Below, in pieces: positions 1,060 to 48,356 of a stretch of DNA of 64,000 nucleotides; positions within the stretch are counted from its first letter, which is position 1; every line of letters begins with the position of its first letter. Made by a program: the position numbers and the translations under genes. Location: contig JAHLWZ010000813.1 in the NCBI GenBank assembly GCA_020536535.1, positions 54,158 to 118,157 on the forward strand. The letters run 5' to 3'. The notes beneath the pieces were generated by a model. That model was not told where the DNA came from, ran no database searches, and saw only the letters and a list, made by a program, of their open reading frames with translations. The stretch comes from Pelomyxa schiedti (taxonomy: Eukaryota > Protista > Evosea).

Positions 1060-4310
<3,251 letters not shown>

Positions 4311-4332: not shown

Positions 4333-7300
4333 TTACACTTTGGAACTATTTGTGGGTTTTACTGATTTGGGGGTGGTACTGCCACTACCCCACGAGTGCA
4401 AATTGTGGTGAAGGTTTTGTACAGGTTCTTCCAGCTCAGGGAATACTTTATACATAGAATCATACAGCGGTCCGACAACAAACTCGTTGAAAGCGCTCTG
4501 TGATGGAATCATTAGTGTTTTGGTGACCATAGATAATTAAATGTCTATCCATTAAGGTGGGTGTATCAACACAACCTGCATTTTTGGTACATTACAATCA
4601 TCTCTTTTCATGAAAGGGGAAACAGGAAGCCCAGCGCTTCGCTCTTTATCCCCTTGGGAGAGGAACTCTTCTACTACACAATGTGCCCACTTTTCACAGA
4701 TTGTCCAGTTTCGTGCTGAATTGGCGAGGTCGGCACATTTGATAAAAAGCTTGAGTGCCAGTAGCCTGGAAGTACTATCTGTGAATTTCAACGAATTTTC
4801 GGCTGTTGCGGTGCTAGACTTCCACATTCCAAGCAGTTCGACATGACTAGGTAACGTGAACAATAAAACCTAAAAATAAATTTTACCGAGACATATCAGT
4901 AGCCAGAACTAGATTAATAACAAGAGTGCGGAATTCGCGAAACCTAAGTTAGTTGTTACTTAGAGACCTGATTCAAATAAGGATACATTTCTTTGGAGAA
5001 CGAGGCTGTAAAATTCATGTCGGGCTGTTCGAGAAGTTGGAACGCTGTGGAGGCATGGAAATTCTCCAGGATAGAAATATCGTTATAGGTCATGCTGAGC
5101 TTAGATTTCGTGGCTGCTGGGAAGTTAAACTTGATTGGTACGGAACGGAGGAAAAAATACCAATAAGGAAGTTATTGTTAACACCTTGATAGTCGTCAGA
5201 TGTAAGGAAACATGAAAATCAAATACCAGGATGCTGTATATCATGAACAACGGCAGAAAATAATGCAGCAAAGTGTTCCATTGGAGTCAACTGCAAGACA
5301 CTGCCACATTTGGTCAGAAACCAATTCATCGCTTGTAGCACGTCACAGGCGTGATTCTGGGGTACTGATTATTTTTAGGTTTTTCCCCTTTTTATTTTCC
5401 TATCCTAACCTTATTGTGATACGGGGTAGTGATATAAGACTGATCCGCGGCATAGATGTAGTTATGTAAGTGTGTTGGTGATATTGCAAGGCTTTGAAGG
5501 ACTCCGCTTTTGTTGAACAGATAAGATGAAGCCTGGGCCAGAAGGGGGCCTAAATCGGTACTTAATGGGATGTCAATTACGCGTGTTTACCTTCTATTCC
5601 CAGTGGGCAAAAATCCCAGCTTTCAATTTGTTGTATTAAAGCCTGGTTGGGTTCCCCCTGCTGCCTGAATCAAAGGGAAGGAAGAATTAAAGAAGCAATC
5701 AATTGGACTAAAAGATTACAAGGCTAGGCTTCCTTGGACGAGAGCAGGTGTAGATAAAATAGGTACTGAGGTCTTGGTTAGAACTTGATCATAAAGGTAA
5801 TCCTTGATATCCGACTCGAGTTCTGTAAATTAATAAGTCGAAAATAAGTTGAGTGAAGGAGACTCCCCACCTGTTACATTACTATAGTCTACACTATACA
5901 TCTTGCGGGAGGTGATGATTCCTATTGCATATGCTAATGTATGGCTCTGCCGTGGGGATACATCTAATGATATTAGATCTATGTCCACTAGTTTGGGTGC
6001 TCACATTCTTTCAGTGACTCTAGGGCGCGCACAACACTTTCAGCAGGAGTACTGAGTAAGTCTCCTGGAGATACTCTTTGGCCGAGAACAGACTGCAAAT
6101 GCACGTTCTGCTCTTGAAGTTCGTCATTCACTTTAGCCATTTTTTTCTGATGGAATTGAGTTTGGTAAGAGTAAGGAAACGCAATACAAGTCTCCTGATC
6201 AGAAATAGTGCGATAGATAATAAGATGACAATGATTAACAATGACCCCAACGTTGGGGGCAGCCAATACACTAGATCGGACTTGGACTTGGTTGTACGGT
6301 ATTCTACAATAAACCCATTCCCAGCAGTTGCATAGTCAGTGATGAACACAAGCAGCACATGTTTTGAATAAATCGTCAGTGGCAGTGAACCGTAGCCATT
6401 GAGCAAACCAACAACAGCTCCATATGTCCCATTTTCGTCAGATAAGCGTACACTGAGTACATCACTCTCTTCAATGTAGAGAGAAGGAAATGTGAGAGTG
6501 ATTGCATCAAAGTCGCCCTTAGGGGATATCAACCACGAGCAGTAAACATTTGCCACATAGGTCATTGCCATCCCCTCTGGAGGGTAGTCACTCTGTATAG
6601 TGCCACTTGATTCTTCGACTACTACGTGCCCACTACAGCCTCGAGAACAGTCGTACCAAAATCTACCCAAGGCACAAACACATTCAGAGTTTACACAGTA
6701 TCCGTGTCCTTGTGACAGTCCGCATTGATTTGCCCGAGTGGACCCACAGGTAGCGTTTTCGGCCCCACAGGAAAGCCAATCTGAGTACTTTAGCACACAG
6801 TACACTAAACTTGATAGATACCTTTGACGTGCAATGCACTTTGAAGGAGGGTTAAATCTATGTTTGTTGTTTTTACTGCACGAAGAAAAACATAAGGAAG
6901 GGAAAATAAAGAAGGTAGATGCCTGTTGTGAGCACAATGTAATAATCTCCTGGAGGGAAGAATGCCGGGAGAACATGTTGCCCCTTCACATCAATGTCAC
7001 TATCAATTCTCTCGCCTACATCATGTAGTTTGGACCAAGAATATAAGTACCTTCCTTTTGGTTAGAGAACGAGTTTGATTTGCGGCTGTTAACCTCCAGT
7101 CCAGTATCCTATCCCCGTGGAAGATAGTATACCACGCCCATAGTGCGGGAAGCATAAGATCATACAAATTTGCACTGTGCAATATTTAGAAGGGTAACGC
7201 AGTTTTTTGTAGAGAGATACGGAACAAAGAAAGTCATATTGAACTGATCTTGAGGGCATATAGTCGTTTCCATTGAAAATTGTAACCCACAAGAAACTCC

Positions 7301-8094
7301 AGCCCAAGGTTCTTCACAGTCACACCAACCAAGGAGATCGTTGCACTCTCCATGGGCACTACAATAGCTTGTGCAACTTGGCTGGTAGCACTCCCAAGTA
7401 AAAATAAACTCCACACTGTGAACATTAACGCCACTGAGGCCAATCCCCTCACCAGCCAAGCTACTTGAATTGTCCGTAGCGAATGTGAAGTAGAGATTTA
7501 AACCAACAGTAGCCCGTGCAGAACAAGCAACAGTGGCAGAAAAAGTGGTTGGAGTTTTGGGTACAGTGCCACTCAATGGAAGATCCACAGAAGCTGTGAA
7601 ATCAGATACGCCCACGGTATTTGACTTGGAGGAAACAACCACACGATCAGAAAGATACTATGCTATGGTGTCAACAAATACAGCAGAAGGAGGGGCCAAA
7701 GATTACCTGATATTCTGTGCTGGTGTTGCCTGTTGACGAATCCCACCACCGAAAATAGATAGTAGGGTATGGATAGTTGAAATGAGGAGCATAGAGAGTC
7801 ACGTTTTCAGTCGAGAATTCTGGCTGGACTTGGCCACACACAACCACATCCTGGAACACTCCATCTTCCTGTTGTGTTTAGTTTAACAACCCAACAAACT
7901 AAAGGACAAGATAGGAAACTAATAGAATGAGGAGCAAAAAAGGGAAAAAAAAAAGGTCGAGTGCACTCAACTACATTTCTAATTTGCAGAGTCGGACAGG
8001 AGGCAATCACTCCCCGGTTAGTCAAGCCATTATGGGACGCGGCCGCGTGCAGCACCCACACCGCTACGAGCACGCACACGCCGAGACCAACCAT
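4333..8094 (-). CDS. Single-pass receptor-type class I cyclic nucleotide PDE: signal peptide, EGF-like, EGF-like, CUB, TM, coiled coil, PDEase_I
   Basis: Signal peptide MVGLGVCVLVAVWVLHAAA. EGF motifs CSAHGECNDLLGWCDCEEPWAGVSC and GHGYCVNSECVCALGRFWYDC. CUB SSGTIQSDYP..YVANVYCSWLI..GNGFIVEY. TM LPPTLGSLLIIVILLSIALFLI. Spliced PDE motifs YHNKNHACDV, HDIQHPGVNNNFL, ENFHAS, LATDMS, KCADLAN, EEFLSQGD. Confidence 0.85.
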
Positions 8095-8366: not shown

Positions 8367-11007
8367 TCAAAGCTTTTTGCCGACGGCGAACCACCTCGGA
8401 ACTTTCTTAGTCGGAGGGATCCCTGTGGGAAAGTGTAAGTAGCGTAAGAGAAAAGTGTTGTGAGTACCCGGAAGTTCTTCAACTTCATGATTAGCAATGG
8501 GCCCAACGTGAACTTGCTTGTTACATCGTGCACAGAGGTGGGCGTAGCAGCTCTCACACCAGAGGGTTGCTTCTTGGGTGGTGCAGTTCAAGCAACGCTT
8601 TACCGCCGGATCAGTGGAGGCGGTGATGCTCCTGGCAGAGGCATTCGAAGTCGATGCAGATGGTAGTGGTGTGTGTGTGGAAACAAAATGCTGAGCAACT
8701 TGCGCATCGTAGCTCCAATTTGGGGGTAGTTTCTCTCTGACATTGGACATCAAGTCCTCCCTTAGAAACGGATGTGATACCACTGATTTATAATTAGCCT
8801 TTGTCAGGAAGATGAAATCTTGCTTACAAGAAGGATTTTTCCATTTGAAATGAATCAAGGCCGATGGAACAAGGCCACGCTTTATCAAGTTACATTCTGG
8901 ATCTCCTAGTTGTTCCACAGGAGGTGAGGTAACTGAGATGTTGTGAGCTATTTCCGTTATTTCATTGACATAGCATACAGAGGATAAACGGATGTTCAGG
9001 GTGAGCTAAACAAGTCTGTACAAATTCGAATATTGATTGCACGTTGGCTCGTGGATGAAATGCCCGTTCTATTTCAATGCGATCAGGGAATCGGACACGT
9101 ATTTTGGCCTGGATGCCCATAAAAAAAAAATGCTTCAGAGTCCGAGTACCTTGTCAAACTGACTCCATTTTCTCATTTCCTCCCTTTCCCGTATCTCTCT
9201 TGTTTTGAGAACTGCACGGTCAGCTTCTGCTTCCCTGCGGGACATCAGTTCATGTTCACGAATGCTATTGAGATCTTCCGCTGTGATTTCATAGAATGCT
9301 TCAGGGATCTCCACTTTTTGTGTTCTTGTGATTAGCTTATGCATGAAAACAGGCGGTTCGGTTAGTGACAACTTACAAGCAGAAGGGTTGAATGGTGTAT
9401 CACATGGTGGGTAAACAGAAACAGTTTTGTCACCTTCAGGTAGATCAAAAACAATAGGCTCGGAAATCCCCTATCAACATAACAAATTTATAGAAGGGAA
9501 TGTCCTACAAACCGACGAGGCTGTGTCTTTTGCAGAAATTTTAGGTGCCTTTTCATGATGTTAAAAAAAAGGACAAAAGATATCGGCAGTAAGTCACCAT
9601 GCTGCCAGAATTTCTAAGAGAATTTTGCTGAGCCTCTTGAAATATGCGAAGCTGTTCGGCATCACTGTTTGGATGGTCAATGCTTCTTCAAAGTTCATAT
9701 GTGTACCGGGCAGCTTGGTCTGCAGCAAGCATCATTTCATAATCCCTTCTTTGAATTTCTAGTCGAGTTGCACGCTGCCTGGCCAGTTCAGCTTGGAAAG
9801 CCTCACTCTCAGCCTGCTTACGTCTTGCCTCACCTTCAGCTTGTTGGATCTTCATGGCTTCTTCAGCTTGTTTTCTTCTAGTTTCAGCTTCAGCCAAGGC
9901 TTTTTCTTCACGAAGACGCTTGGCCTCTTCTTCCACTTGCCTCCTAAGAGGTACCATTAGATGCAGACGTTGTTCGCATTAGCTCACCTTGTGGTTGTAT
10001 GTTGATGTTGAGTTATACAAACATTTAGGGAGCTTAATTACAAACCGAGCTGCTTCTTCCTGTGCTCTTTGCTGTTGGGCAACTTCGAGATCGTGCTTGC
10101 GCTTTTCCTCCTTCGGTTTGATTAGGATGATATGAGGAGGGAAAAAGGGTAACTAAAGCAGCTTTTTCAGCTTCAACGAGTCTTTTTTGTTCTTTTTCAA
10201 TTTCCACAACTTCTTCAAATGATTTCCCAGTCGAGCGATATGTCAATCTTCACACGCAAATATTAAAGTAAGTAAGAACAAAGGGGGAGAAGAACTCTTT
10301 CTTACCTGAGCAGGACAGAACCTGATGAAATGCCCAACTGCTGTAAAGTTGTACTCTGAAGAACTAGTATACCCCCAACCTGGATGCAAGTGAGTATCTT
10401 CTTACGCACAGAGAAGCAGGACCTCGCGATTCATAAAGTACAACACAGGCTGCAGATAAGAGCCACTCTTGTCAACCATTTTTGCCAATGAAGGTTGTGA
10501 AGGACTTGCACAAAGGTTCAAGATGTCCCACAATGTTGCCGAAGAGGGTGTCGAGACGACAACACGATCTCCCGATTCAGGCTGGATTGCCACGACCACA
10601 GGCTTCCCTTTTTCTAGTTATCAGGGAAAAAACAACTCAAGAGTGAGGGTCGAAAAACCAGCAGTAGAGCAAGGAGTCAGGTCCAGAGTTTGACCAGGGG
10701 CCAAGCCAGATATACGAAAAATCAGAGACATATCCAATGGCTTCCCGTTCTTGCTGCATCATTTTTTTTTTGGTTTGGTTTGGTTTGTTTAAACAAAACA
10801 TAACGCAACAAAAGCGCAACAGCAAACACGAATCCCAAGACAAAGAGAGCGTCCCAGATCTGAAAAACAAACGCACGACAAACAGTATCCCGCAGGCTGC
10901 AGACCAAAATTCGAGCACGCCGAGTCCCGCACCTGCGACAAACTAGTTGCGGGCGTAACTTTGACGGAGTAACGACGCCCCCCAAACACCACCGACAACG
11001 TGCTCAT
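8367..11007 (-). CDS. TUG/ASPL (ASPSCR1)-like UBX protein with a C-terminal B-box zinc finger
   Basis: N-terminal UBL1 (RRYSVKVTPATSLSQVRDSAC), second ubiquitin-like segment, coiled coil, UBX (IRVRFPDR...GLVPSALIHF), B-box CLNC..C..C...C..C...H.....H, C-terminal VPRWF. Confidence 0.78.
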
Positions 11008-31739: not shown

Positions 31740-34700
31740 TTATAGGGTGGAATGAGCAGAGAGCAAAGAGGCCAATTGAGGAACCACATTGGAAAAGCTT
31801 GGCCTGTTTTTGGGGTCTGTGGCCCAGCACTGCTGTGTCACATTTATCCATTCAGTTGGGCAGTCAGGTGGAAAAACAGGTCTCACTCCTGCAGCCACTT
31901 TGATTGGAATATCCCAGAATACACAACCATGCCATGGGTCCGACCTGGTGTGTGATGTCATTTATACATTTATATGGGCCAGTGCTGTATTGTAAAAATG
32001 CATTGTACTGTTTGGGAGGAAACCTTGTCCACAGTTCCCACAGGCAAATACCAAAACTATACACGTCTGCTTTGTGATTGTATGGCAGCCTGTCAAATAA
32101 CTCTGGGGCCTAAATGTCATTAATCTCAAGGCCGAAGTCAGGGTGCATTTTACCATGAAAGTTGGAGTTCCAACCCCTGTGGTGAAATCCATCACTTTTC
32201 CTGTAGTACGGTCATAAGAGAAGATCGAGTTCACACAGGCGTAAAACCTGCATCTTCAACATCTCTGGAGGTTCCGAAGTCTATTTTTTCTTAATACGCA
32301 AGTAACAAAAGGAGACCAATTACCTGTAAGTTTACAGCTCACAGGTGCGTGTAAGTCCAGAGAGACTAAAAGTACATTGTCACATTTCAAATCTCCTAAT
32401 AGGATATTAACGCATTTCGGAGCTACAGGAATCACAGCACTGTACAGAACGTTATTGAGGTGGAGGTACTCCATTGCCTGAGCGATATTGTATGCGAATT
32501 TGAGGTGCAAAGGATACACCATTTCTTTATCCGACTTTAGAAATCTCTTCAAACTTCCGTTTTGAATGAACTCAGAACATACGCACAGTTTATCTTGGTT
32601 TGTTGAAAAAGGGAAAAAAGTTTAGATATCCCCAACCTGGAATGCAGGAGGCACCAATGAATTTAACAATGCACGGATGATGAAGTCTATTCATTATCGA
32701 CATCTCCTTCCTGAAAGCTCGAATATCCTTTTGTTGAGTCATAATTTTTACTGCCAGTATTTGTGAACGGTATTGTCCCCTATAGACACTCCTGTTCAAT
32801 TCCAGGTAGATTGTAAGAAAACTCCAGGGAGAAAGGCAGTACCCAAAAGATCCGGATGCCAAAGGCTCAGGATCCACATTTACTTCTTCTGGGTCGAGCC
32901 ACTCAGAAATGGCACCTTCAACTTTAATTTGAATCCATGTGGAACAGCTCTTTGTACCACTTCCAAATTCAATTTTAATTGGGTGCTCAAAGTGGGTAGT
33001 ATATTTCAGCCGGAAATGAACATGCACGTGTATACTACTTCTTGAAGGAACGCAACCTTTTCCTGGAACACAGGACAGGTCAACAACTGGATTTTCTTCA
33101 GGAATATACATGCAGTAAGGCATGCAATGACTACTCGAATTCCTCAGCTCAATATCGTCAGTGACTTCCTGGCCAACAGGACACAATTCGGAACCAAGTC
33201 CGAAATCCAATTTCTCCTTATCAAGTGACAGACCTTGCAACATGCATGAATCGTCTCTAGGCATTTTAGTCTTGTCAATCTCCTCTATAGACATAATTGC
33301 TATAGTCTCTGCCCCTACTCTAAGTGAAGCCTGCGCTGCTCTTCGCCTCTGTCTCGCAAATAGAAATACTCCCACGCAACATGCACACAGGAGAAGGAGA
33401 AACAAAAGTGAAGCAATTCCAAAAATCATTCCACGCTCAGCTGGTGACAGTGGTTTCTTTCTGGCATGGAATGTGAGTGAAAATCCCCGGGCAGAATTTT
33501 GTGGAGATGTTGAGAATTCCACCAACATTCTTGGTGAATTGATTACTACTAAGCGATCTTGTATATCTGTTACAAATGACACAATAAAATCTCCATATTG
33601 GCCGTCTTCAGTAGCGTAATAAAAAGACAAGCTCTCCCCCAAAAATGCAGTAAAGTGTATGAGAACCTCCAGTTCGTCATATTTGCTGGAACTTGATGAT
33701 GCATCAACAAACCACCGGCATATAATTCCATTCAGGAAATGGATCTGAGAAAAACTCTCAGATGGGATAGAGTCATTGTAGTAAGCATCGCTATTAATGG
33801 TTCCCTCAGAAGAACCTATCACAGATGAATATGCTGAGCACCCTCTGCTGCAGTCAAACCAGTAGTGACCACCGGAACATACACACGTATTATCACCAGA
33901 ACAAACCCCGTTTCCGGTTTCTGCATGGCAGGTATTTCCAGAACCCTCTCCACAGGAGGAAGTGATGTCACCCCAACATGTGGGGTAGTCAAGAACCTCA
34001 AACTACAGGCCACATATAAGTACGATTTAGAATTGATCCTCTACTACCGTGTCAAAGTAAACCTCAGAATCTACAGAAAGAAGATAGAGGTGATAAAAGC
34101 CAGGAACGAGGAAAGGAGTGAATATCTGAGTCATTGTAATATTTTCCATTGTGAGATCTGGATCAACCCCAGTAGAAGAGGCCCATCGCCACTCAAGTAT
34201 GTCTAAAGTTCTAGATAGGGCAATAACCATAGAATTCGTCACACCAAAGTCATTAATAACCTGCCTATGGAGGTGTGAATTTCTTTGAAGAAATTATGAA
34301 TAAAGAAGACCAACGGAAGGAAGTATGACACAACGAAATCCTCACCCGGGCATAACTGCCTCGGAAACACAAAGTTTATATCACAGTTAGCCATGGCCCA
34401 GTTGTCTTCACATACACAAGCTCCCCATTGACAATATCCGTGGAGGCAGGGATCACAGTCACTAGGAAAACAACCTTCACACTCCCATCTAATAGGAAAA
34501 TGAGAGAAATGTGAAATCAATGTGAAAAAGGGAATGACCGAACCTGAGGACAAACGAGTACTCTTCAAATAGTACGTTGATCCATTCCGAGTCATTTCCC
34601 ATCATACTGCAACCAAAAGAGAACCTCAATTCCACAGCCAGTATGTAACTGTTTCCCAGATATACAGTCAGGGTCACATTTGATACCCCAGAAGGTACCT

Positions 34701-35196
34701 TCCCCCCAACAGGCATTCCCTCCACTTCCACATAAGGATACAGAGTTTTCCACACTCCAGAAAACATCTCTCTATAGTAGTTGCTCTGCTCAATAAAAAC
34801 TAGGTACGAAGCGGAACAGTTGCAAACCAGCTCTGTGCTATTAGAACCCCATAACTCCAGTGCCTGGTTTTTATCTGCCCCCCATGCCCAGTCCAGTGTT
34901 ACCTCTGGGGAATTTTGGTCAAAGTGAACCACTCTCTCATCGCTTCCAACTTCATCACTCACAAAGTCACTCTGCACAACACCACATTCCGCAACTACAG
35001 CACCAACCACCTCTTCTGTGGCTTGTGATTTCCCAGCAGTGTCAGAAGCCCTCACAGTGGCTGAAAATCCAATGCAGCTGCTACTGTTACCAACTTCAGA
35101 CTCACTTGCAGCACCAGGCACAATCAACAATAGGAACACATGCCAGAATAGACACATAGTAGACCAGAAGTTTACATTAGGGGCTGCCAGCAACAT
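31740..35196 (-). CDS. Single-pass receptor TKL kinase: signal peptide, EGF/EGF/CUB ectodomain, TM, Ig/MSP-like juxtamembrane domain, kinase
   Basis: Signal peptide MCLFWHVFLLLIVPGAAS, EGF and CUB motifs, TM MIFGIASLLFLLLLCACCVGVFLF, ASGSFG, AVK, spliced YRDLKCDN, DFG, GTPTFMAPE, DVYSFG. Start could be 35157, 35196 or 35253. Confidence 0.88.
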
Positions 35197-35383
35197 CACC
35201 TGGCGTTTTTGTTTGGTTTTTAATTGGCCTTGATAAGATCGGCTCAGAACCATTTTTAGGTGTCAATCCCGTACACGGAACACGGGAATTCGAGATTCCA
35301 GTAATGCAGTTAGTTCCTTCCAGGATAGTACTAGAAAAACTGAAAACGAGGCTTGTTTGTTGGAACACGGCACTGCATAGCAA

Positions 35384-38300
35384 ATGTCGTCATTGTCGAG
35401 AGCAGCAGCGTTTCTGCTACTGTTTTCCAGTCTCATTTTTGGCATAATTTGGGGCCAGTCAGAAGACTTTGTACAGCCGGCACCGCAACAACATAATTAT
35501 GGAACGAGGAGTGCAAGATATACTACGTCCGGGGAGTACTGCCTAAATGTGTGGACCACGGTACCAGTCTACGATGGCCAGTGGCCACCATCGATTGTAA
35601 TGACGTACGACTACCCCGTCGTGGACTGTGGCGTCGTGGGCGCGACATTTCAGGAAGATTTCAGGGGGTACCACTGTTTCCCTGATTTCCCACAACTGCA
35701 ATTCGTGTGGTGGCTGTCGCCGGTGCCTCCTGCGGGTAACGTGAGCGAGGTGCCTTCGGACGTGTACTTTGCGGAAGACGAATTGCACGTATTAAAGTTA
35801 TGGGACGCAGTAGAAGGATCACAACAGGACATCAGGCAAGTTGTTTTCTTTTTTATTTTTTGTGAAGACTTGAGTTTGTGTAACAGGCCACATTATGTAG
35901 GTCTTTTTTCACTGTCTCTGGTCTTGAGGACACATCAGTGGTACCTAGTGAAGATTACCCTGGAGAGTTTTCAATTTCAATGACCTGTATGGAAAATGCA
36001 CTTGTTGCAGCTTCTGTGGGTATCTCGTTCTCAATGCCGTCCCTGGAGCCAACTCTTCCTTCCTCCACTTTTTTCTCCGCTAAATGGAGGTGCCTGCCCC
36101 CTAAATGCACTCCGGCTTGTGAGTTGCATGGCTCTTGCATTGTTGGCACTTGCTTCTGTGATGATGGATGGCACGGTACTTCCTGTGAGATATTCATTGC
36201 TGTAAACTTGCTGTTGTGCCCAGGCGATGAAATAGTTTTCAACTATTCTATTCCGTGTGTTATTTTCGACTCCTTCTCTGTCTCACTTCCTATGCAGGAT
36301 GGAGATTGATGGTATTCCTGGTGCTGGAAACCTTCTTTCCTATGTAATTGCCTCCGAGTGGCTGATTGATCAAAGATATTTTTTGACTTGGAGCATCACA
36401 ACCCCATATCAGATAGCGCCAAATTGGAATCAAAACTACTCTGGGATTGGAATATCCCCCGCCTTCTTATCCCCAGGGGTCTATCTGATGAACTTGCTAT
36501 CTTCCAGTGGGACAGTGTTTGAAACATTGTGGTTTGAGGTTTTTGGCTGGGAGGAGTGTGGTTACTATGACGCAGTATGTGGCTCAGGTTACAGCAACGA
36601 CTGTAATCTAGACTCCAGCAGAGGGTACTGCGACTCTACTTACGGGGAGTGTAATTGCTTCTCAGGAAGTTTCTGGTACGACTGCAGTCGTGGATGCCCA
36701 GATGAGACTGTGCACCTGACAAACTCAAGTGCTGAAGTTTGGTCAGATTATCCAGTTTCTCACCTCTACAGTGATACAAGATTGGTGATTCAGAGCCATT
36801 GTTCTTGGCTCATTGAGCCAGCGAATGACTATGACGAAATCATCATTTCCTTCCCCTACTTCAAACTTGAATCAGGGACACTGACTCTCGAGACTACAGA
36901 AGGCGAGCTCATTGGATCAGTATCTGGGGACTCCCCCGCACCGTTCATTGTCGGAAAAGTAAAAGTGTTCATCCAATTGGATACTATCAGGTCAAGCTAT
37001 GGGTTTGTATTCAACTACACCACAAGACAAGTCCCTCTTTCCGCAGTTGCAAAAGCGTTCATCGGCGTGGCTTCCATCTTTGTTGGAGTCTGTATCACTG
37101 CTGGAGCCTGTGTAGTTGCTCTCTGTATCGCCAGGCACTTCAGAAAACGAGCAGAATTCTTGAACAACCTTCAAGCTGAAACCCTGGAACCTCTGTCTCC
37201 TCAACAGATTGAGGAGTTTGTGGCATCAAGCAGTTCTCTTGATCACCTTGGGATTCAGATTGACAAAACTCGCATTCGATTCGGTCTTGAGGATGGGGCC
37301 TCGTGTTCCATAGGAAGTGAATTGTATGAAGATTTGGAAATAGAGAACCGGTATCATCCTTAACATCCTGTCATGTTTAAAATTATCCCTGTGACAGGTC
37401 AGGGGGGATGATTGCTTATTCTTTGTTTGCTCCAACTCAGCAAAAGGGTTTGTCAATCAAAATAACTCCAGGCCGTGGTATCATACCCAGTCACACTGCA
37501 GTAACAATTTCTATTGAAGCAACGATGAACTTCACTACACACTTTTTCAACGTCCTCAGAATTGATGCATACAATGTATGGTCTCTTAAAGAAGCGATTT
37601 CATTGTGGAATACTCCTCGTGAGGAAAGAACAGCGATGGGGTCTGTGTGGTTACCCATCAATTTGGAGGGCTCTCTATCTGATAGAATTGACCCAGAAGA
37701 AGTTTTTTTAGAACCCACTCTTTTTGCTGGGGCAGGTTATGGGTAAACAGACTCGCAAGATTTTTTGGACTTTCTCAATACTTCAGGTCAGTATTCCGCG
37801 GGATATATAGATCACAATCAGTTGCAGTTAAAATCCCAAACCATCAAGAAGGATACGGTGAAGCAGAGATGAGGCATTTCGAGAATGAATGTGCTTTAAT
37901 GAAACACCTCAAACATCCTTGTATTATCTCATTTATTGGTGCTTCCCATGTGAGAGGTATTTACTTCTATTAGTAGTTCAAATCCATTGAGTTGTGAGAG
38001 GAAAACTTTGTATTTTGACGGAACTGGCCGAGAAGGGCACTCTTAGTGACTTCCTGGAATCTAGTGCTTCCATTTCCTACTTCCTTTTGATCAAATTTGC
38101 ACTTGATATAGCACAGGCCATGGGATTCTTGCACGAGAACAAAATCATGTTTAGTATGTTATCTAATGCAATATGAGTGTTTAACCCCAAAACAGGGGAC
38201 CTAAAATGCAGCAATGTTCTCCTTGTCTCCACATCAGAACAGTCCCCCGTGTGCTGCAAACTAACAGGTAGAATTTGGTTACTTTTATGTAGTTACTGCT

Positions 38301-44680: not shown

Positions 44681-47600
44681 TCACTTGTCTCCATCAGTGG
44701 AAAGTGCTGCAGAGGGTGAATTTTGAGCCCGTTGCCAACTCTGTAGGTTGTTCCTCACGTTTGTCATTATGGTTTCTTCCAACTGTGGGACAACTTGCAC
44801 AAAAACTGTGGCAAACGGCATTATCACAAACTCGATAAAGGCACCCTGGCATTTCGGTACTTTCTGTGTCGGGTTATTATGGGTTAGTTTGTATGAGAAA
44901 GGGGACTAACATTTGAGGACCGGTCCATGAACGGTGAAACGGGCAAATTTCGGCGTTTTTCTTCATCGCCTTGTCTGAAGAATTCCTGTAGGGATTGGTT
45001 GTTGGTTACGGTAAATAGAGAAGTAGGAAGGACGAAGGATGGGTTACTACACACTTCCATGATTCTTTGTGCCCAAACAGATGCTGTGGACCAACAGCGG
45101 GACGGATTATTCACATCGGCGTATTTGATGAAAAGTTGTAAGGTGAGCTCTCGATCCGATTTTTTACTGTAATCCATCTTTCCCCCAGATGCGACTTTGG
45201 CTTTGAACTGTCCCAGAAGCTCAACATGTTTTGCCATATCTGGAAAAAGTGTGAGTAAAAACGGATCGAACAAAGCAGGTAATGTTGACCTGTGGAAAGT
45301 ACCAGTGTAGTCACAAGGCGGTGAAACTCTATTTGTTGGGCCTAAAGTGCATTAGACTATCAGCAAGGGTTGAGTTCTTATAGTTTACCTTATCCCAGGA
45401 AGACAAAAAATTGGTTTCGGGACTGCCAAATAAAACTTTAAAGGCTTCAGCGGCATGCATGTTTTCTAGTATAGAAATCCCGTTATATCGAAGAGCTATT
45501 CTATCGAAAGTTGTCTGAAGGAAATTGTTGTTGACCCCAGGGTGCTTGAAGTCTGTACAGTTTATCAACTTTACCTAATTTCCGTTCACCAACCATGTAT
45601 GGCACAGGCAAATATTCCTGCAAATACTTCCAGATCTGTAAAAATCCCCAAACCAAGAGACTTGATAAATATATGTAAGGCCTGAGCGACATCGGCTGCG
45701 TGCACTGCGCAATGGTATCTGCAACTGGTCAGAAACAGTAAATGTCAACAAAGTCTAGGTTACGGATTGTCAAAGTAGCCAAGGCTGATTTTCTTCAAGA
45801 AATTATCTACTTTTTCTTTATCAATGGTAAGCTTCGCAAATAGGTCATATTGCTCCAAAATTTCCATGATAACCAAACAGAAGGCTATAGCTTAATAGAA
45901 ATTAATTGGTAGAGAAATACCATGATGCCTCACCTGGAGGTTGTTGAACGCACAAAACGTTAAAATCCCAGGAATCTAATTTCAACGCCTTTCCACTTTT
46001 ATCATGTTGTTTCAATTCCTTGCTAAGTACGGTGAGGAAAAAAAAAAACGAAAATCAGGACTAACCCCAACTCCCTGCCCATTGAGCTGGAGCTCAATGA
46101 CTTAGAAAGAGAGCGTTGTTCCATTTCTCTTTCATCACTATTATATCGCAGTAGTGTGGTTGTTAGGAAGTGATCAACTTCAGTATCCAAAGCTATAATT
46201 TATTCATCAGATTCAAAGGAAAAAACATTACAGTAACATACACACAAGCCCCATCTGTTTTTTTGAGATATAATCTGCTTTGTATAGTTTATTAGAAGCC
46301 ACTAAACCAATAACTTCAGAGAGGGCAAGATGATCTTCAGCAGTGATTTCTGGGTGAAATTACAAATGCGTGCCAAAGAAACAAAGAAATACTTTTGTGC
46401 TTGTTAATGGCCATAAGCTTTTGAACAACAAGTTCGGCTGGCGTGCCCATTAAATTTTGGGATGGCGCATTAATTAGACCCATTTGTGTTTCTAAATCCT
46501 GAACCTACAAAGAGCTGTATTAGATATTTTTTCATTTTTTTTGGAAAGCACCTGTGCTCTTGTTCTAAGTAGGACACTCCAACTGACGAGAACGACGATT
46601 CCAGTTACAAAGAGAACTGGTAAAGCCACACCAATCACAACCTTCCATGTATTTTGCTTCAAAATAAAAGAGGCCTCAGGCTGAAATACCATCAGCACCC
46701 AAGGTGTGTTCGAGACTTAAATTTAGTTTGTTAGCTTCATCTGTACCTGATGTGGAGATTACTTGCCTTGTTCAACAAAAACCAAGTATGCAGTGCCACT
46801 AATCACCATTTTCCCCCAATTTGTCCCTGGAACCTTGATCCTTGTTGATATTTGCATGCGTGACATGTGATGGTACACACAATTTGATAAGAGTCAATTG
46901 TACTATTTTGCAGGTAGTAGACATCACTAGATTTATTGAATTCAGCCCCAAATAAAACCCGGAACCCTAACTGCGAGCCTCCAATAACAGCACCTTGGTT
47001 GGTGAACAACATGGCAAATTCTTTTGAAACAGTGAATTCGCAAGTCAAACTCCAAAAAATCTCACGATCTTCATCATAACTATGATCCTCAAGGGTATTC
47101 ACAGTTTCTTCAATTGTTAGACCCACATAACATCCAGCAACAAAGTGGTCTTCATAATAAGAAGGGGAACAAATAGAGACCCTGAGATCTGGGAAAAAAT
47201 TACTAACACCCAAGAGGAATGTAATGGCTTTACCATCTGTTGCTTCATTTTTTATGGGAACTGAGAAAGCTACCTCTCGGGTTGGGTTGGTACTGGGTTC
47301 GCATAAAGATGAAGACTCAGACCCACCCATAGACCAAAAGAGCTGGGGAAGGGATGCATTCATAAACGCAAATGATTTAAACCCCGAAAAAAGATATCTA
47401 AAGTTCGTTTTTACACAGTAAAAACTGTAGAAGAAAAACGAACCTGCCCCACTCAAGTTTCCCAGAGTTCCGTGTGATATATAGCGTGTCTATCTGAGAA
47501 AATACTGTGAAGACACCTGGAGCCATCCCTTCCAATAATCTTGATTCCTCAAAGCCATCTCTTATTTCACAAAAATTTACACATGGAGTGCAAACTCCTT

Positions 47601-48356
47601 GTCCTTTTCAAGCCTGAGAATCGAACACAAAGAAGATGTGTCATAACAAGGGAAAACATACCGGGGAAGGTGGCGTTACAGAACAATTCCCATTCCACAG
47701 GTGCGCACTCACACGTCTCCCCAGGTGTTATTGCTTCGGGTGAAACCAAATTAGGTTGCGCATAAAACTTTGTGGGGTCTCAGATGTTATGAACAAGTGT
47801 CTCAGCCATACCTCTGAGAGGCGATCCGAACGCAAATCAACAAGGACTCCAAAGGCATAAGGCCACGGAGTATGCGCGGCCATCTCAGCCGTTAAGTAGG
47901 TTAGTGACAACACTGAGGGGTCATTTGCCTGTGTCCATCCATTTGCGTATGCAGCCGCCACTGACTCGGCGGTGAGCTTAAGGGTCTGGTAGCACGTTTA
48001 CAACAGAGCCAGATAAGAATACGCATAACACAACACGAAACGAAAGGCGAGATTCAGTACCGTCACTACTGAGCCATAAAGATTATTCAAGGAGGAGGCA
48101 AAAAGTATTGTTTCTGTGGATGTCTGTGACACTTTGTCCCTTTTTTTTTTTTTGGAAGAAAAACCCTACTGTTAGGAAACCGAACGAACAGTGATTGTTT
48201 ATATTGTGTATTGTTTGCTGACTAGGGGATCATATGTGGTATTGTTGTGAAAAAAAAATAATACAAGTTTAATTTGGTTTCAACTGGGGATAGTAGGAAA
48301 AGCACTAGTAGTGGTAACAATATTTGTGGTCTTAGTATACGGCACGAGGTTGTCAT
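44681..48356 (-). CDS. Single-pass receptor-type class I PDE with a Cache-like ectodomain
   Basis: Signal peptide MTTSCRILRPQILLPLLVLFLLSPVET. TM VVIGVALPVLFVTGIVVLVSWSVLL. PDE motifs YHCAVHAADV, HDFKHPGVNNNFL, LENMHAA, LSTDMAKH, KYADVNNP, EEFFRQGD, KCQGAFIEFV. Confidence 0.82.

What the first reader, a model, noticed from the sequence alone, without database searches (positions are those of the whole stretch)
4333..8094. Receptor phosphodiesterase: an EGF/CUB ectodomain joined through one TM helix to an intact class I PDE
Seen: signal peptide, Cys-rich N-domain, two EGF-like repeats, CUB, one TM helix, a short coiled coil (KKMAKVNDELQEQNVHLQSVL), a PDE8-like helix (TPAESVVRAL), then a PDE domain with all metal-binding motifs (YHN..H..DV, HD..HPG, E..H, TDM, DLAN) and the invariant Gln. 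Known: characterised eukaryotic class I PDEs are regulated by cytosolic GAF, PAS, REC or CaM-binding modules, or by rhodopsin in choanoflagellate Rh-PDE. Single-pass receptors with ligand-binding ectodomains normally output through kinases, phosphatases or guanylyl cyclases. Inference: this is a ligand-gated cAMP/cGMP eraser, the mirror image of a receptor cyclase. I do not know this receptor class as characterised.
Basis: partly seen in the sequence, partly recalled or inferred. Interest (0 to 1): 0.88.

Follow-up and report, generated by a model that had tools for sequence, protein, structure and literature searches.

The report
Single-pass receptor phosphodiesterase in an amoeba
The anaerobic amoeba Pelomyxa schiedti has a real gene that joins an outside-facing, ligand-binding-type domain set through one membrane helix to an intact enzyme that destroys cAMP or cGMP. 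It belongs to a family of at least 20 such genes found so far only in this amoeba group, and I found no paper that describes such receptors.

Summary
Window 4333-8094 (minus strand) is one gene of 18 exons and 967 aa.

Evidence for a single gene:
- A 61%-identical paralog has all 17 introns at the same positions. Exons are conserved and introns are not.
- GenBank's model of the paralog uses the same splice sites.
- Mastigamoeba balamuthi has colinear full-length homologs.
- Mastigella eilhardi has complete assembled transcripts of sister receptors (sensor, TM, module, PDE).

The gene is not unique. P. schiedti has at least 20 loci with the module next to PDE exons. Family members carry WIF/EGF/CUB, OpuAC, Peripla_BP_6, NMT1-like, Laminin_G/Ig or Cache-like ectodomains. 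About 30 loci in this genome carry the same CUB exon, and most of those I read run into a receptor-kinase domain.

Ligand control of the PDE is inferred, not shown. No RNA read crosses the TM junction of this gene. I found no published description; the records are named only "cAMP phosphodiesterase". The scan had already flagged the paralog and a second receptor PDE in this window. I class it as a new variant of a known kind, interest 0.68.

The parts
4333..8094 (-). Whole coding region, 18 exons, 967 aa. Exons (high to low coordinate): 8094-7975, 7868-7707, 7657-7221, 7174-7094, 7050-6923, 6875-6822, 6780-6188, 6146-6005, 5963-5871, 5822-5720, 5664-5591, 5549-5410, 5356-5227, 5184-5161, 5116-4987, 4943-4887, 4846-4576, 4497-4333
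   Evidence: The model was built from coordinates. All 17 intron positions are shared with the paralog on G000:C828. They also match GenBank's model of that paralog.
8038..8094 (-). Signal-peptide-like hydrophobic N-terminus (aa 1-19)
   Evidence: Kyte-Doolittle window score 2.28. The paralog's N-terminus is at the homologous position.
7400..7868 (-). WIF-like beta-sandwich domain (aa ~41-180; exon 2 and first part of exon 3)
   Evidence: Pfam WIF is weak: E 0.008 here, 3e-5 in the paralog and 9e-4 in the M. balamuthi homolog. The paralog model matches human WIF-1 WIF-EGF, 2ygo, at E 1.7e-6.
7289..7393 (-). EGF-like repeat 1 (aa 183-217)
   Evidence: EGF_2 and EGF_TEN match weakly here. In the paralog they are above cut-off: EGF_Teneurin 29.4 bits against 24.3.
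6822..7264 (-). Middle beta domain (aa ~226-327) on exons 3 (end), 4, 5 and 6.
   Evidence: The stretch first taken as a 378-nt intron was 52% identical to the paralog. It resolves into three conserved in-frame exons. The AF2 model has low confidence here.
6921..6922 (-). GC donor of intron 5, the only non-GT donor; the paralog has GT here
   Evidence: GC-AG introns make up 1.59% of P. schiedti introns (PMC8887013).
6644..6780 (-). EGF-like repeat 2 (aa 328-373)
   Evidence: EGF_2 matches weakly. The Cys columns are nearly invariant across the ectodomain family.
6299..6637 (-). CUB domain (aa ~375-488)
   Evidence: Pfam CUB E 2.9e-8, 34.4 bits against cut-off 21.4. The paralog model matches neuropilin, MASP, PCPE-1 and TSG-6 CUB domains at TM 0.75-0.78.
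6197..6253 (-). Single transmembrane helix (aa 504-522), followed by five Lys/Arg in the next eight residues
6147..6187 (-). 41-nt phase-0 GT-AG intron between the TM exon and the juxtamembrane exon, the critical junction
   Evidence: The paralog has an intron of the same length and position. The intron is 41% identical, against 59% and 73% for the flanking exons.
5720..6146 (-). Juxtamembrane/pre-catalytic helical module (aa 526-637; exons 8-10). It consists of a short heptad-like helix and then conserved helices carrying the TPAE, S-(N/R)-K-L/M-Y and D-x-D-x-x-Y-L motifs.
   Evidence: The module is conserved in 21 aligned family members (alignment A3). It has no Pfam or PDB sequence match. 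Exon 8 is 79% identical to the paralog. It is helical in the AF2 model of the paralog.
4432..5664 (-). Class I PDE catalytic domain (aa ~640-935; exons 11-18) with the Tyr-His-Asn acid/metal motif, His-Asp, Glu..His, Thr-Asp-Met, Asp-Leu-Ala-Asn and the invariant Gln (aa 913)
   Evidence: Pfam PDEase_I. The catalytic columns are nearly invariant. The paralog gives E 1e-51 to human PDE4A and a fold TM of 0.9 to PDE4D/9A.

Best explanation
This is one expressed-type gene of Pelomyxa schiedti. It encodes a type I single-pass membrane protein.

Shown:
- Outside the cell lie a WIF-like domain, EGF, an unassigned beta domain, a second EGF and a CUB domain.
- One TM helix follows.
- Inside lie a conserved helical juxtamembrane module of about 110 aa and a catalytically intact class I cyclic-nucleotide phosphodiesterase.
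- The gene belongs to a family that I found only in Archamoebae and in two environmental sequences of unknown origin. The TM-module-PDE cassette stays constant and the ectodomain is exchanged.

Inferred mechanism:
- The protein works as a dimer, as class I PDEs do.
- Binding of an extracellular ligand (a protein, glycan or lipid-modified partner for the WIF/EGF/CUB type; small molecules for the PBP/Cache types) changes the register or spacing of the TM helices.
- In the model the TM helix runs on unbroken into the juxtamembrane helix. The change is passed through the conserved module to the catalytic domains and alters cAMP/cGMP hydrolysis under the membrane.
- The receptor would then set local cyclic-nucleotide levels against the roughly 35-40 cyclase loci of the same genome.

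My probabilities: about 0.92 for a single gene with this topology, and about 0.55-0.6 that the ectodomain truly regulates activity. Substrate and sign of regulation are unknown.
For: Gene structure:
- The model gives an uninterrupted 967-aa ORF through 17 short introns.
- In the paralog on C828 the exons are 54-82% identical in DNA (exon 1 is only 30%) and the introns 33-49%. Exon lengths are conserved and all intron positions are identical.
- Non-synonymous difference is 0.12-0.36 in every domain, while synonymous sites are saturated at 0.75-0.84.
- GenBank's KAH3756279.1 uses the same 17 introns. It aligns to my model 1-960 in one HSP at 61.5% identity.

Homologs and transcripts:
- Two full-length colinear homologs exist in M. 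balamuthi: 938 aa, and 969 aa with Pfam EGF + CUB + PDE and a TM helix.
- Mastigella eilhardi Trinity transcripts with complete ORFs encode signal peptide, OpuAC, TM, module and PDE.
- A spliced transcript contig of the paralog covers exons 8-18.

Topology:
- The ectodomain has 20 Cys.
- EGF and CUB are extracellular-type folds.
- Five Lys/Arg follow directly after the TM helix.

Family:
- 34 of 37 proteins with a strong module match have a TM helix 5-28 aa before it.
- 20 P. schiedti loci have the module next to PDE exons.
- Sensor-type ectodomains occur in the family: Peripla_BP_6, OpuAC, NMT1-like, Cache-like and Laminin_G.

Enzyme and linker:
- Catalytic residues are intact.
- The fold is canonical, and the TM helix continues as a 35-residue helix in the AF2 model of the paralog.
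- The juxtamembrane exon is as conserved as the catalytic domain (79%), against 54% for the ectodomain.
Against: - No RNA evidence exists for this gene itself. The only runs found hold it as DNA.
- The paralog's transcript contig starts after the TM exon.
- One intron needs a GC donor.
- There are no biochemical data on activity, substrate, dimerisation or ligand.
- The structure models were made on the paralog (61% identical overall, 74% in the cytosolic part), not on this protein. They are monomers.
- The module also matches non-receptor PDEs of other eukaryotes weakly. It may be a general pre-catalytic element rather than a dedicated transducer.
- The heptad pattern after the TM helix is short, about 4 heptads, and imperfect.
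Confidence: 0.6

Rival explanations
1. It is a constitutively active, membrane-tethered PDE. The ectodomain serves adhesion, sorting or clustering, for example placing cNMP breakdown at contact sites or phagocytic cups. It does not control catalysis allosterically.
For: - Mammalian PDE3 and apicomplexan PDEs use membrane segments mainly as anchors (established knowledge).
- CUB, EGF and WIF domains are common in adhesion and matrix proteins.
- The module also matches non-receptor PDEs weakly.
- No regulation data exist.
Against: - Many family members carry dedicated small-molecule sensor folds (OpuAC, Peripla_BP_6, NMT1-like, Cache-like). These make little sense as mere anchors.
- The TM-to-module spacing is constrained to 5-28 aa in 34 of 37 proteins.
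- The juxtamembrane exon is as conserved as the catalytic core.
Confidence: 0.27
2. It is a gene-model artefact. A secreted or membrane CUB/EGF protein gene and a separate PDE gene lie head to tail and were joined by my model.
For: - No RNA read across the junction in this gene.
- An ATG lies three codons into exon 8.
- GenBank's paralog model is itself over-extended at its 3' end.
Against: - Only 41 nt separate the TM exon from exon 8. That stretch is a phase-preserving GT-AG intron of the same length in a paralog whose synonymous sites are saturated.
- The same colinear architecture occurs in M. balamuthi proteins and in complete Mastigella transcripts.
- 34 of 37 module-bearing proteins have the TM helix just upstream.
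Confidence: 0.04
3. It is an ecto-PDE. The catalytic domain faces outward and clears extracellular cAMP, as modelled for Dictyostelium PDE4.
For: Amoebozoa do have a membrane class I PDE modelled with an extracellular catalytic domain (PMC11988041).
Against: - With an N-terminal signal peptide and a single TM helix, the disulfide-rich EGF/CUB part and the PDE must lie on opposite sides.
- EGF and CUB are extracellular folds.
- Positive charges follow the TM helix on the PDE side.
- The PDE part has 7 Cys, an odd number that cannot all pair, and no excess of N-glycosylation sequons.
Confidence: 0.03
4. It is a decaying or silent copy whose function is carried by the paralog on C828.
For: - A GC donor in intron 5 where the paralog has GT.
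- No transcript-derived fragment of this gene was found.
Against: - The ORF is intact over 18 exons with all catalytic residues, and non-synonymous change is far below synonymous change.
- GC-AG introns are normal in this genome at 1.59%.
- In a variant contig of one run, all three indels fall in introns or upstream of the ATG.
Confidence: 0.05

Closest known systems
Receptor guanylyl/adenylyl cyclases (animal NPR-A/GC-C, Dictyostelium ACG, trypanosome receptor adenylate cyclases)
   Same: They are single-pass, with a ligand-binding ectodomain, a helical juxtamembrane or linker segment and a dimeric cytosolic cyclic-nucleotide enzyme. Some family members here even use the same ectodomain fold class (periplasmic-binding-protein type).
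   Different: The output degrades the messenger instead of making it. There is no kinase-homology domain. The linker is a different, unassigned helical module.
Rhodopsin-phosphodiesterase (Rh-PDE) of choanoflagellates
   Same: A membrane sensor at the N-terminus is joined by a helical linker to a cytosolic class I PDE in one polypeptide (bioRxiv 10.1101/2020.04.14.040642, listed).
   Different: In Rh-PDE the sensor is an 8-TM light-absorbing rhodopsin. Here there is one TM helix and a 480-aa ectodomain. The lineage is also different (Amoebozoa).
Dictyostelium PDE4 (DdPDE4)
   Same: It is an amoebozoan membrane-bound class I PDE (PMC11988041).
   Different: DdPDE4 is modelled with two TM helices and an extracellular catalytic domain, and has no sensor ectodomain. 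Here the catalytic domain is predicted to be cytosolic.
Bacterial sensor c-di-GMP phosphodiesterases (periplasmic Cache/PBP sensor, TM, HAMP or S-helix, EAL or HD-GYP)
   Same: The logic is the same: an extracellular sensor linked through the membrane to a second-messenger-degrading domain. The Cache and PBP sensor folds are shared with family members (PMC1592074).
   Different: The catalytic family and the messenger differ. These sensors usually have two TM helices, and they are prokaryotic.
Receptor protein kinases of P. schiedti with the same CUB/EGF ectodomain (and, by analogy, animal RYK with a WIF ectodomain)
   Same: About 30 genomic loci match the EGF2-CUB-TM exon at 29-57% identity. 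Most of the ten I read run on into a Gly-rich kinase start. One of them was confirmed as a kinase by Pfam.
   Different: The output is a protein kinase. Only this gene and its C828 paralog pair this ectodomain with a PDE in P. schiedti.
Human PDE4, PDE9, PDE3 catalytic domains
   Same: The catalytic fold and all metal and substrate residues are the same. For the paralog: E 1e-51, about 30% identity, TM 0.9. PDE9-like proteins are the best named relatives of the sister Mastigella protein.
   Different: It is no closer to any one human family than to the others. None of their regulatory modules (UCR, GAF, PAS, REC, CaM-binding) was found.

Membership tests
Class I cyclic-nucleotide phosphodiesterase (Pfam PDEase_I, PF00233) | Profile match above the curated threshold | tested here: met
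   Three exon pieces score 46.3, 41.7 and 83.9 bits against cut-off 24.8.
Class I cyclic-nucleotide phosphodiesterase (Pfam PDEase_I, PF00233) | Metal-binding His/Asp residues, general-acid His and invariant purine-binding Gln | tested here: met
   All are present in the 967-aa model. The same columns are at least 90% conserved in 40 relatives. The paralog aligns residue by residue to PDE4A.
Class I cyclic-nucleotide phosphodiesterase (Pfam PDEase_I, PF00233) | All-helical PDE catalytic fold | tested here: met
   Tested on the paralog (79% identical in this domain), not on this protein. AF2 pLDDT is above 90 over the domain. TM is 0.9 and rmsd about 2 A to PDE4D, PDE9A and PDE3A.
Class I cyclic-nucleotide phosphodiesterase (Pfam PDEase_I, PF00233) | Hydrolysis of cAMP and/or cGMP | not testable with these tools
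   This needs an enzyme assay. Substrate preference cannot be read from the sequence with confidence.
CUB domain (PF00431) | Profile match above threshold and CUB beta-sandwich fold | tested here: met
   34.4 bits against 21.4. The paralog model scores TM 0.75-0.78 to neuropilin, C1r, TSG-6 and MASP CUB domains.
WIF domain (PF02019) | Profile match above threshold; WIF fold | tested here: inconclusive
   16.4 bits here and 24.2 bits in the paralog against cut-off 25. Foldseek to WIF-1 2ygo gives E 1.7e-6 and TM 0.52 over WIF+EGF. I call it WIF-like only.
Single-pass (type I) receptor enzymes | Signal peptide, ectodomain, exactly one TM helix and a cytosolic catalytic domain in one reading frame | tested here: met
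   Hydrophobicity was scanned with a simple window; SignalP and DeepTMHMM were not available.
Single-pass (type I) receptor enzymes | One mRNA spanning the ectodomain and the catalytic domain | tested here: inconclusive
   No RNA run was found for this locus. The paralog's transcript contig covers only exons 8-18. Complete transcripts exist for Mastigella family members.
Single-pass (type I) receptor enzymes | Ligand binding changes catalytic output | not testable with these tools
   This is inferred from the architecture and from sensor-type ectodomains in the family.
Rhodopsin-PDE (enzyme rhodopsin) | Multi-pass microbial rhodopsin domain N-terminal to the PDE | tested here: not met
   Only one TM helix lies between the signal peptide and the PDE. 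There is no rhodopsin match in Pfam.
Ecto-PDE of the DdPDE4 type | Catalytic domain on the extracellular side | tested here: not met
   The topology inferred from signal peptide, single TM helix, charge distribution and Cys content places the PDE in the cytosol. This is a prediction, not an experiment.

The most novel reading that the evidence does not exclude
Archamoebae have evolved a whole class of ligand-regulated, single-pass receptor phosphodiesterases, at least 20 per genome. A constant TM-module-PDE cassette is plugged onto interchangeable sensors. These include bacterial-type PBP and Cache domains for small molecules, and WIF/EGF/CUB or Laminin-G/Ig sets shared with receptor kinases for macromolecules. 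Together with the expanded cyclases, this gives these amoebae a push-pull transmembrane cyclic-nucleotide sensing system without G proteins. The 85-aa 'TPAE...SNKLY' module would be a new transmembrane signal transducer for PDEs.
Probability: 0.45. Interest if true: 0.82.

Novelty: new variant of a known kind. Interest (0 to 1): 0.68.

Why it matters
Textbook cyclic-nucleotide signalling puts receptors on the synthesis side, as receptor cyclases or GPCR-coupled cyclases. PDEs are treated as cytosolic enzymes regulated from inside the cell. The only known sensor-PDE fusion in eukaryotes is the light-gated Rh-PDE.

A large family in which chemical-sensor ectodomains are wired directly to a class I PDE would show that a cell can read an outside signal by erasing the messenger. 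It would also offer:
- a natural set of ligand-switchable PDEs for synthetic biology, as chemogenetic counterparts of Rh-PDE;
- a new juxtamembrane module in which to study how a single TM helix controls a PDE dimer.

In addition, it is a clean example of ectodomain shuffling between receptor kinases and another receptor-enzyme class in a protist. The idea can be tested directly because some family members have PBP-type sensors whose ligand classes can be guessed.

Tried and rejected
- **First gene model.** It had 15 exons and a 378-nt 'intron'. I rejected it because that stretch was 52% identical to the paralog with few gaps. It holds three more exons.
- I rebuilt the model from coordinates only.
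- **RNA evidence.** The look-up of sequencing runs gave four runs of one sample, all holding the locus as unspliced DNA. Read laying showed no joints.
- **Word-index protein searches.** The M. balamuthi ectodomain found only itself. Exon 7 found nothing in its length range. Neither blank says anything about absence.
- **Joined model.** Remote searches used single exons by reference or the public paralog and homologs as proxies. The joined model was used only inside local scripts, against sequences already fetched. An exact look-up of this gene's own GenBank protein was therefore left out.
- **Juxtamembrane module.** It has no Pfam family and no PDB sequence relative.
- **CUB-cyclase fusions.** I looked for them and found none. 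The cyclase and CUB matches that share a contig (C476, C171) are too far apart or in the wrong order.
- **Paper searches.** Searches for receptor, transmembrane or receptor-type phosphodiesterase returned only bacterial c-di-GMP enzymes, ENPP1 and PDE6.
- **Catalytic-domain tree.** This is the quick version only; the careful search did not finish. It does not group the Pelomyxa and Mastigamoeba WIF/CUB-type PDEs. I do not draw a donor or an order of events from it.
Full report
**What is there.** The window is eukaryotic DNA with very short introns. Stop-free pieces on the minus strand between 8094 and 4333 carry CUB at 34.4 bits and PDEase_I at 46.3, 41.7 and 83.9 bits, all above Pfam's cut-offs. 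EGF matches are weak. The convergent neighbour at 3369-4143 (+) is an AAA ATPase. A separate B-box-like gene lies upstream at 8367-8918 (-).

**Organism.** Near-identical and paralogous proteins are GenBank entries of Pelomyxa schiedti. Earlier notes of this scan name the same species. The genome handle has 52 Mb in 5337 contigs and the window is C813:54158-118157. The genome paper reports 7.4 introns per gene, 98.4% GT-AG and 1.59% GC-AG introns, and gene models refined with transcriptome data. It does not mention phosphodiesterases (PMC8887013).

**Gene model.**
- A first model had 15 exons. I tested it against the closest paralog on contig C828, fetched as L043.
- In a global DNA alignment the exons are 54-82% identical (exon 1 only 30%) and free of frame-breaking gaps. 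The introns are 33-49% identical, with length differences that are not multiples of three.
- The exception was one 378-nt 'intron' at 52% identity. It resolves into three further conserved exons. One of the new introns has a GC donor here and GT in the paralog.
- The final model has 18 exons, 17 introns of 40-106 nt and 967 aa.
- Mapped onto the paralog, nearly every boundary lands on GT or AG with the same exon length.
- GenBank's independent model of the paralog (KAH3756279.1) uses exactly these 17 introns up to residue 944. It aligns to my model 1-960 in a single 61.5% HSP.

**The critical junction.** The TM helix ends exon 7 at 6188. Exon 8 starts at 6146 after a 41-nt phase-0 GT-AG intron. 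The paralog has a 41-nt intron at the same place. Exon 8 is 79% identical in protein. That leaves no room for a terminator and a promoter between two genes.

**Selection.** Between this gene and the paralog, synonymous differences are saturated (0.75-0.84). Non-synonymous differences are 0.30 in the ectodomain and 0.15 in the cytosolic part. The juxtamembrane exon (0.13) is as constrained as the catalytic domain (0.12). Both halves are therefore under long-term purifying selection. In one run's variant contig, the three indels all fall in introns or upstream of the ATG.

**RNA evidence.**
- For this locus I found none. The four runs are one DNA sample and show no splice joints. No transcript-derived fragment of exon 7 turned up.
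- For the paralog, a 1235-nt Logan contig (SRR23919876, L044) is a spliced transcript covering part of exon 8 through exon 18. It ends at the TGA that my model predicts.
- That contig confirms ten of the introns. It also suggests that GenBank's 1925-aa model runs on into a neighbouring gene. It does not reach the TM exon.
- Single-mRNA evidence for the architecture comes from Mastigella eilhardi. There, Trinity transcripts with complete ORFs encode signal peptide, OpuAC domain, TM helix, module and PDE.

**Architecture and topology.**
- Hydrophobicity finds only the N-terminal signal-like segment and one helix at aa 504-522.
- The 484-aa ectodomain has 20 Cys. Five Lys/Arg follow the helix.
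- Pfam on the paralog's ectodomain gives WIF (24.2 bits, just under cut-off), EGF (above cut-off) and CUB (above cut-off).
- An AF2 model of the paralog's ectodomain has mean pLDDT 72, and above 90 in the CUB domain. It matches neuropilin, MASP, PCPE-1 and TSG-6 CUB domains, and the WIF-EGF unit of human WIF-1.
- The middle beta domain remains unassigned.

**Cytosolic part.**
- The paralog's cytosolic half matches human PDE4A at E 1e-51, with all catalytic residues aligned.
- Its AF2 model has mean pLDDT 86. It shows the TM helix running on as one 35-residue helix, then four or five shorter helices, a disordered loop and a canonical PDE fold (TM 0.9 to PDE4D, PDE9A and PDE3A).
- These models are of the paralog and are monomers.

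**A family, not a single fusion.**
- A HMMER scan of 1.84 billion representatives with the 90-aa exon 17 gave 4777 matches. Among the best 150, the long proteins closest to this gene nearly all have a signal-like N-terminus and one strong TM helix 200-300 aa before the PDE.
- The look-ups name them as Pelomyxa schiedti, Mastigamoeba balamuthi and Mastigella eilhardi, plus a few environmental sequences.
- Two M. balamuthi proteins (938 and 969 aa) are colinear with this gene from ectodomain to C-terminus. One has Pfam EGF, CUB and PDE.
- Other members carry OpuAC, Peripla_BP_6, NMT1/THI5-like, Laminin_G_3 with bacterial Ig/cadherin-like, or Cache-like ectodomains.
- All share an ~85-aa helical module directly after the TM helix (alignments A1 and A3). 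It has no Pfam family and no PDB sequence relative.
- 34 of 37 proteins with a strong module match have a TM helix 5-28 residues before it.
- In the P. schiedti genome, 20 loci have the module 0.5-1.4 kb upstream of PDE exons on the same strand. One is a second gene in this window.
- Weaker matches of the module occur in non-receptor PDEs of other eukaryotes. So the module may be an older pre-catalytic element recruited as a transducer.
- Named proteins outside Archamoebae found with the Mastigella cytosolic part are PDE9-like, PDE4-like and chytrid GAF-PDEs. None is single-pass.
- In a quick tree the archamoebal receptor PDE catalytic domains form one clade (aLRT 97). This gene and its paralog sit with Mastigella sequences rather than with the M. 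balamuthi WIF/CUB-type proteins. Support there is modest and the careful search did not finish.

**Shared ectodomain with kinases.** The EGF2-CUB-TM exon has about 30 relatives in the genome at 29-57% identity. Most of the ten I read run on into a Gly-rich kinase start, and one was confirmed as a kinase by Pfam. Two lie in this window. So the same ectodomain type feeds kinases in what appear to be most cases, and a PDE in two genes.

**Context.** The genome has 145 PDEase_I exon matches and 62 cyclase-domain exon matches on roughly 35-40 loci. [quoted passage not shown]

**Literature.** Searches for receptor, receptor-type, receptor-like or transmembrane phosphodiesterase, for PDE domain architecture in protists, and around Rh-PDE found no description of a eukaryotic single-pass receptor PDE. 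The signalling-helix survey, the Physarum genome paper and the 2025 Dictyostelium PDE review do not describe one either. The nearest amoebozoan case, DdPDE4, is modelled with two TM helices and an outward-facing catalytic domain.

**Mechanism.**
- Shown: the architecture, the predicted topology, intact catalytic residues, and conservation of the TM-module-PDE cassette with exchangeable sensor ectodomains.
- Inferred: a dimeric receptor in which ligand binding outside shifts the TM and juxtamembrane helices, so that the module changes access to or geometry of the catalytic sites. The analogies are GAF-PDE linker helices, receptor cyclases and Rh-PDE (established knowledge of those families).
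- Substrate (cAMP or cGMP), sign of regulation and ligand are unknown.

- The joined 967-aa model was assembled only inside local scripts from window coordinates. It was never typed or sent to a search or folding tool. Remote steps used exon references or the public paralog and homologs.
No step had to be referred.
- The scan had already noted the paralog on other DNA (s1-396694, s1-386941) and the second receptor PDE of this window (s1-626559).

**Verdict.** I rate it a new variant of a known kind, interest 0.68.

Noticed in passing
window 44684-48300 (-): A second receptor-type PDE gene. It has a different ectodomain with no Pfam match on a 228-aa piece. It then has a TM helix, the same juxtamembrane module and PDE exons. 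It resembles GenBank KAH3767345.1.
   Followed up: partly
window 32259-35262 (-) and 35381-37743 (+): Two divergently arranged genes with the same CUB/EGF-type ectodomain. Their open frames run into protein-kinase motifs, so they are receptor kinases sharing this gene's ectodomain family.
   Followed up: partly
L043 (G000:C828:41500-49500), gene on minus strand; L044: GenBank's paralog model KAH3756279.1 (1925 aa) reads past a TGA by splicing into downstream exons. The spliced transcript contig L044 ends at that TGA, so the GenBank model probably fuses two genes.
   Followed up: partly
L044:610-760 versus L043 sense 5316-5517: The paralog's transcript contig uses an acceptor 7 nt inside exon 15, which shifts the frame. 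This is either an unproductive splice isoform or an assembly error.
   Followed up: no
window 6921-6922 (-): A GC-AG intron in this gene where the paralog has GT-AG. It is the only in-frame solution that keeps the conserved residues.
   Followed up: yes
window 5389, 7945, 8123; 6752, 6978, 8017, 8131, 8135: One of the four DNA runs carries a variant contig. Its three indels all lie in introns or upstream of the ATG. It has five SNPs. One, at 8017, would change Asn26 to Lys just after the signal peptide. This looks like allelic or strain variation.
   Followed up: no
G000 whole genome: The cyclic-nucleotide toolkit is very large for a 52-Mb protist genome. It has 145 PDEase_I exon matches and 62 class III cyclase exon matches on roughly 35-40 loci.
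   Followed up: partly
window 3369-4143 (+) and 8367-8918 (-): The neighbours are a convergent AAA+ ATPase gene (VCP/SPATA5-like motifs) and an upstream gene with a B-box-like Cys/His zinc-finger motif. Neither is part of the PDE gene.
   Followed up: no
P0002, P0004 (Mastigamoeba balamuthi proteins): Some family members carry two PDE domains. P0002 has NMT1-like, PDE, TM, module and a second PDE. This would place one PDE domain on each side of the membrane, or else reflects a fused gene model.
   Followed up: no
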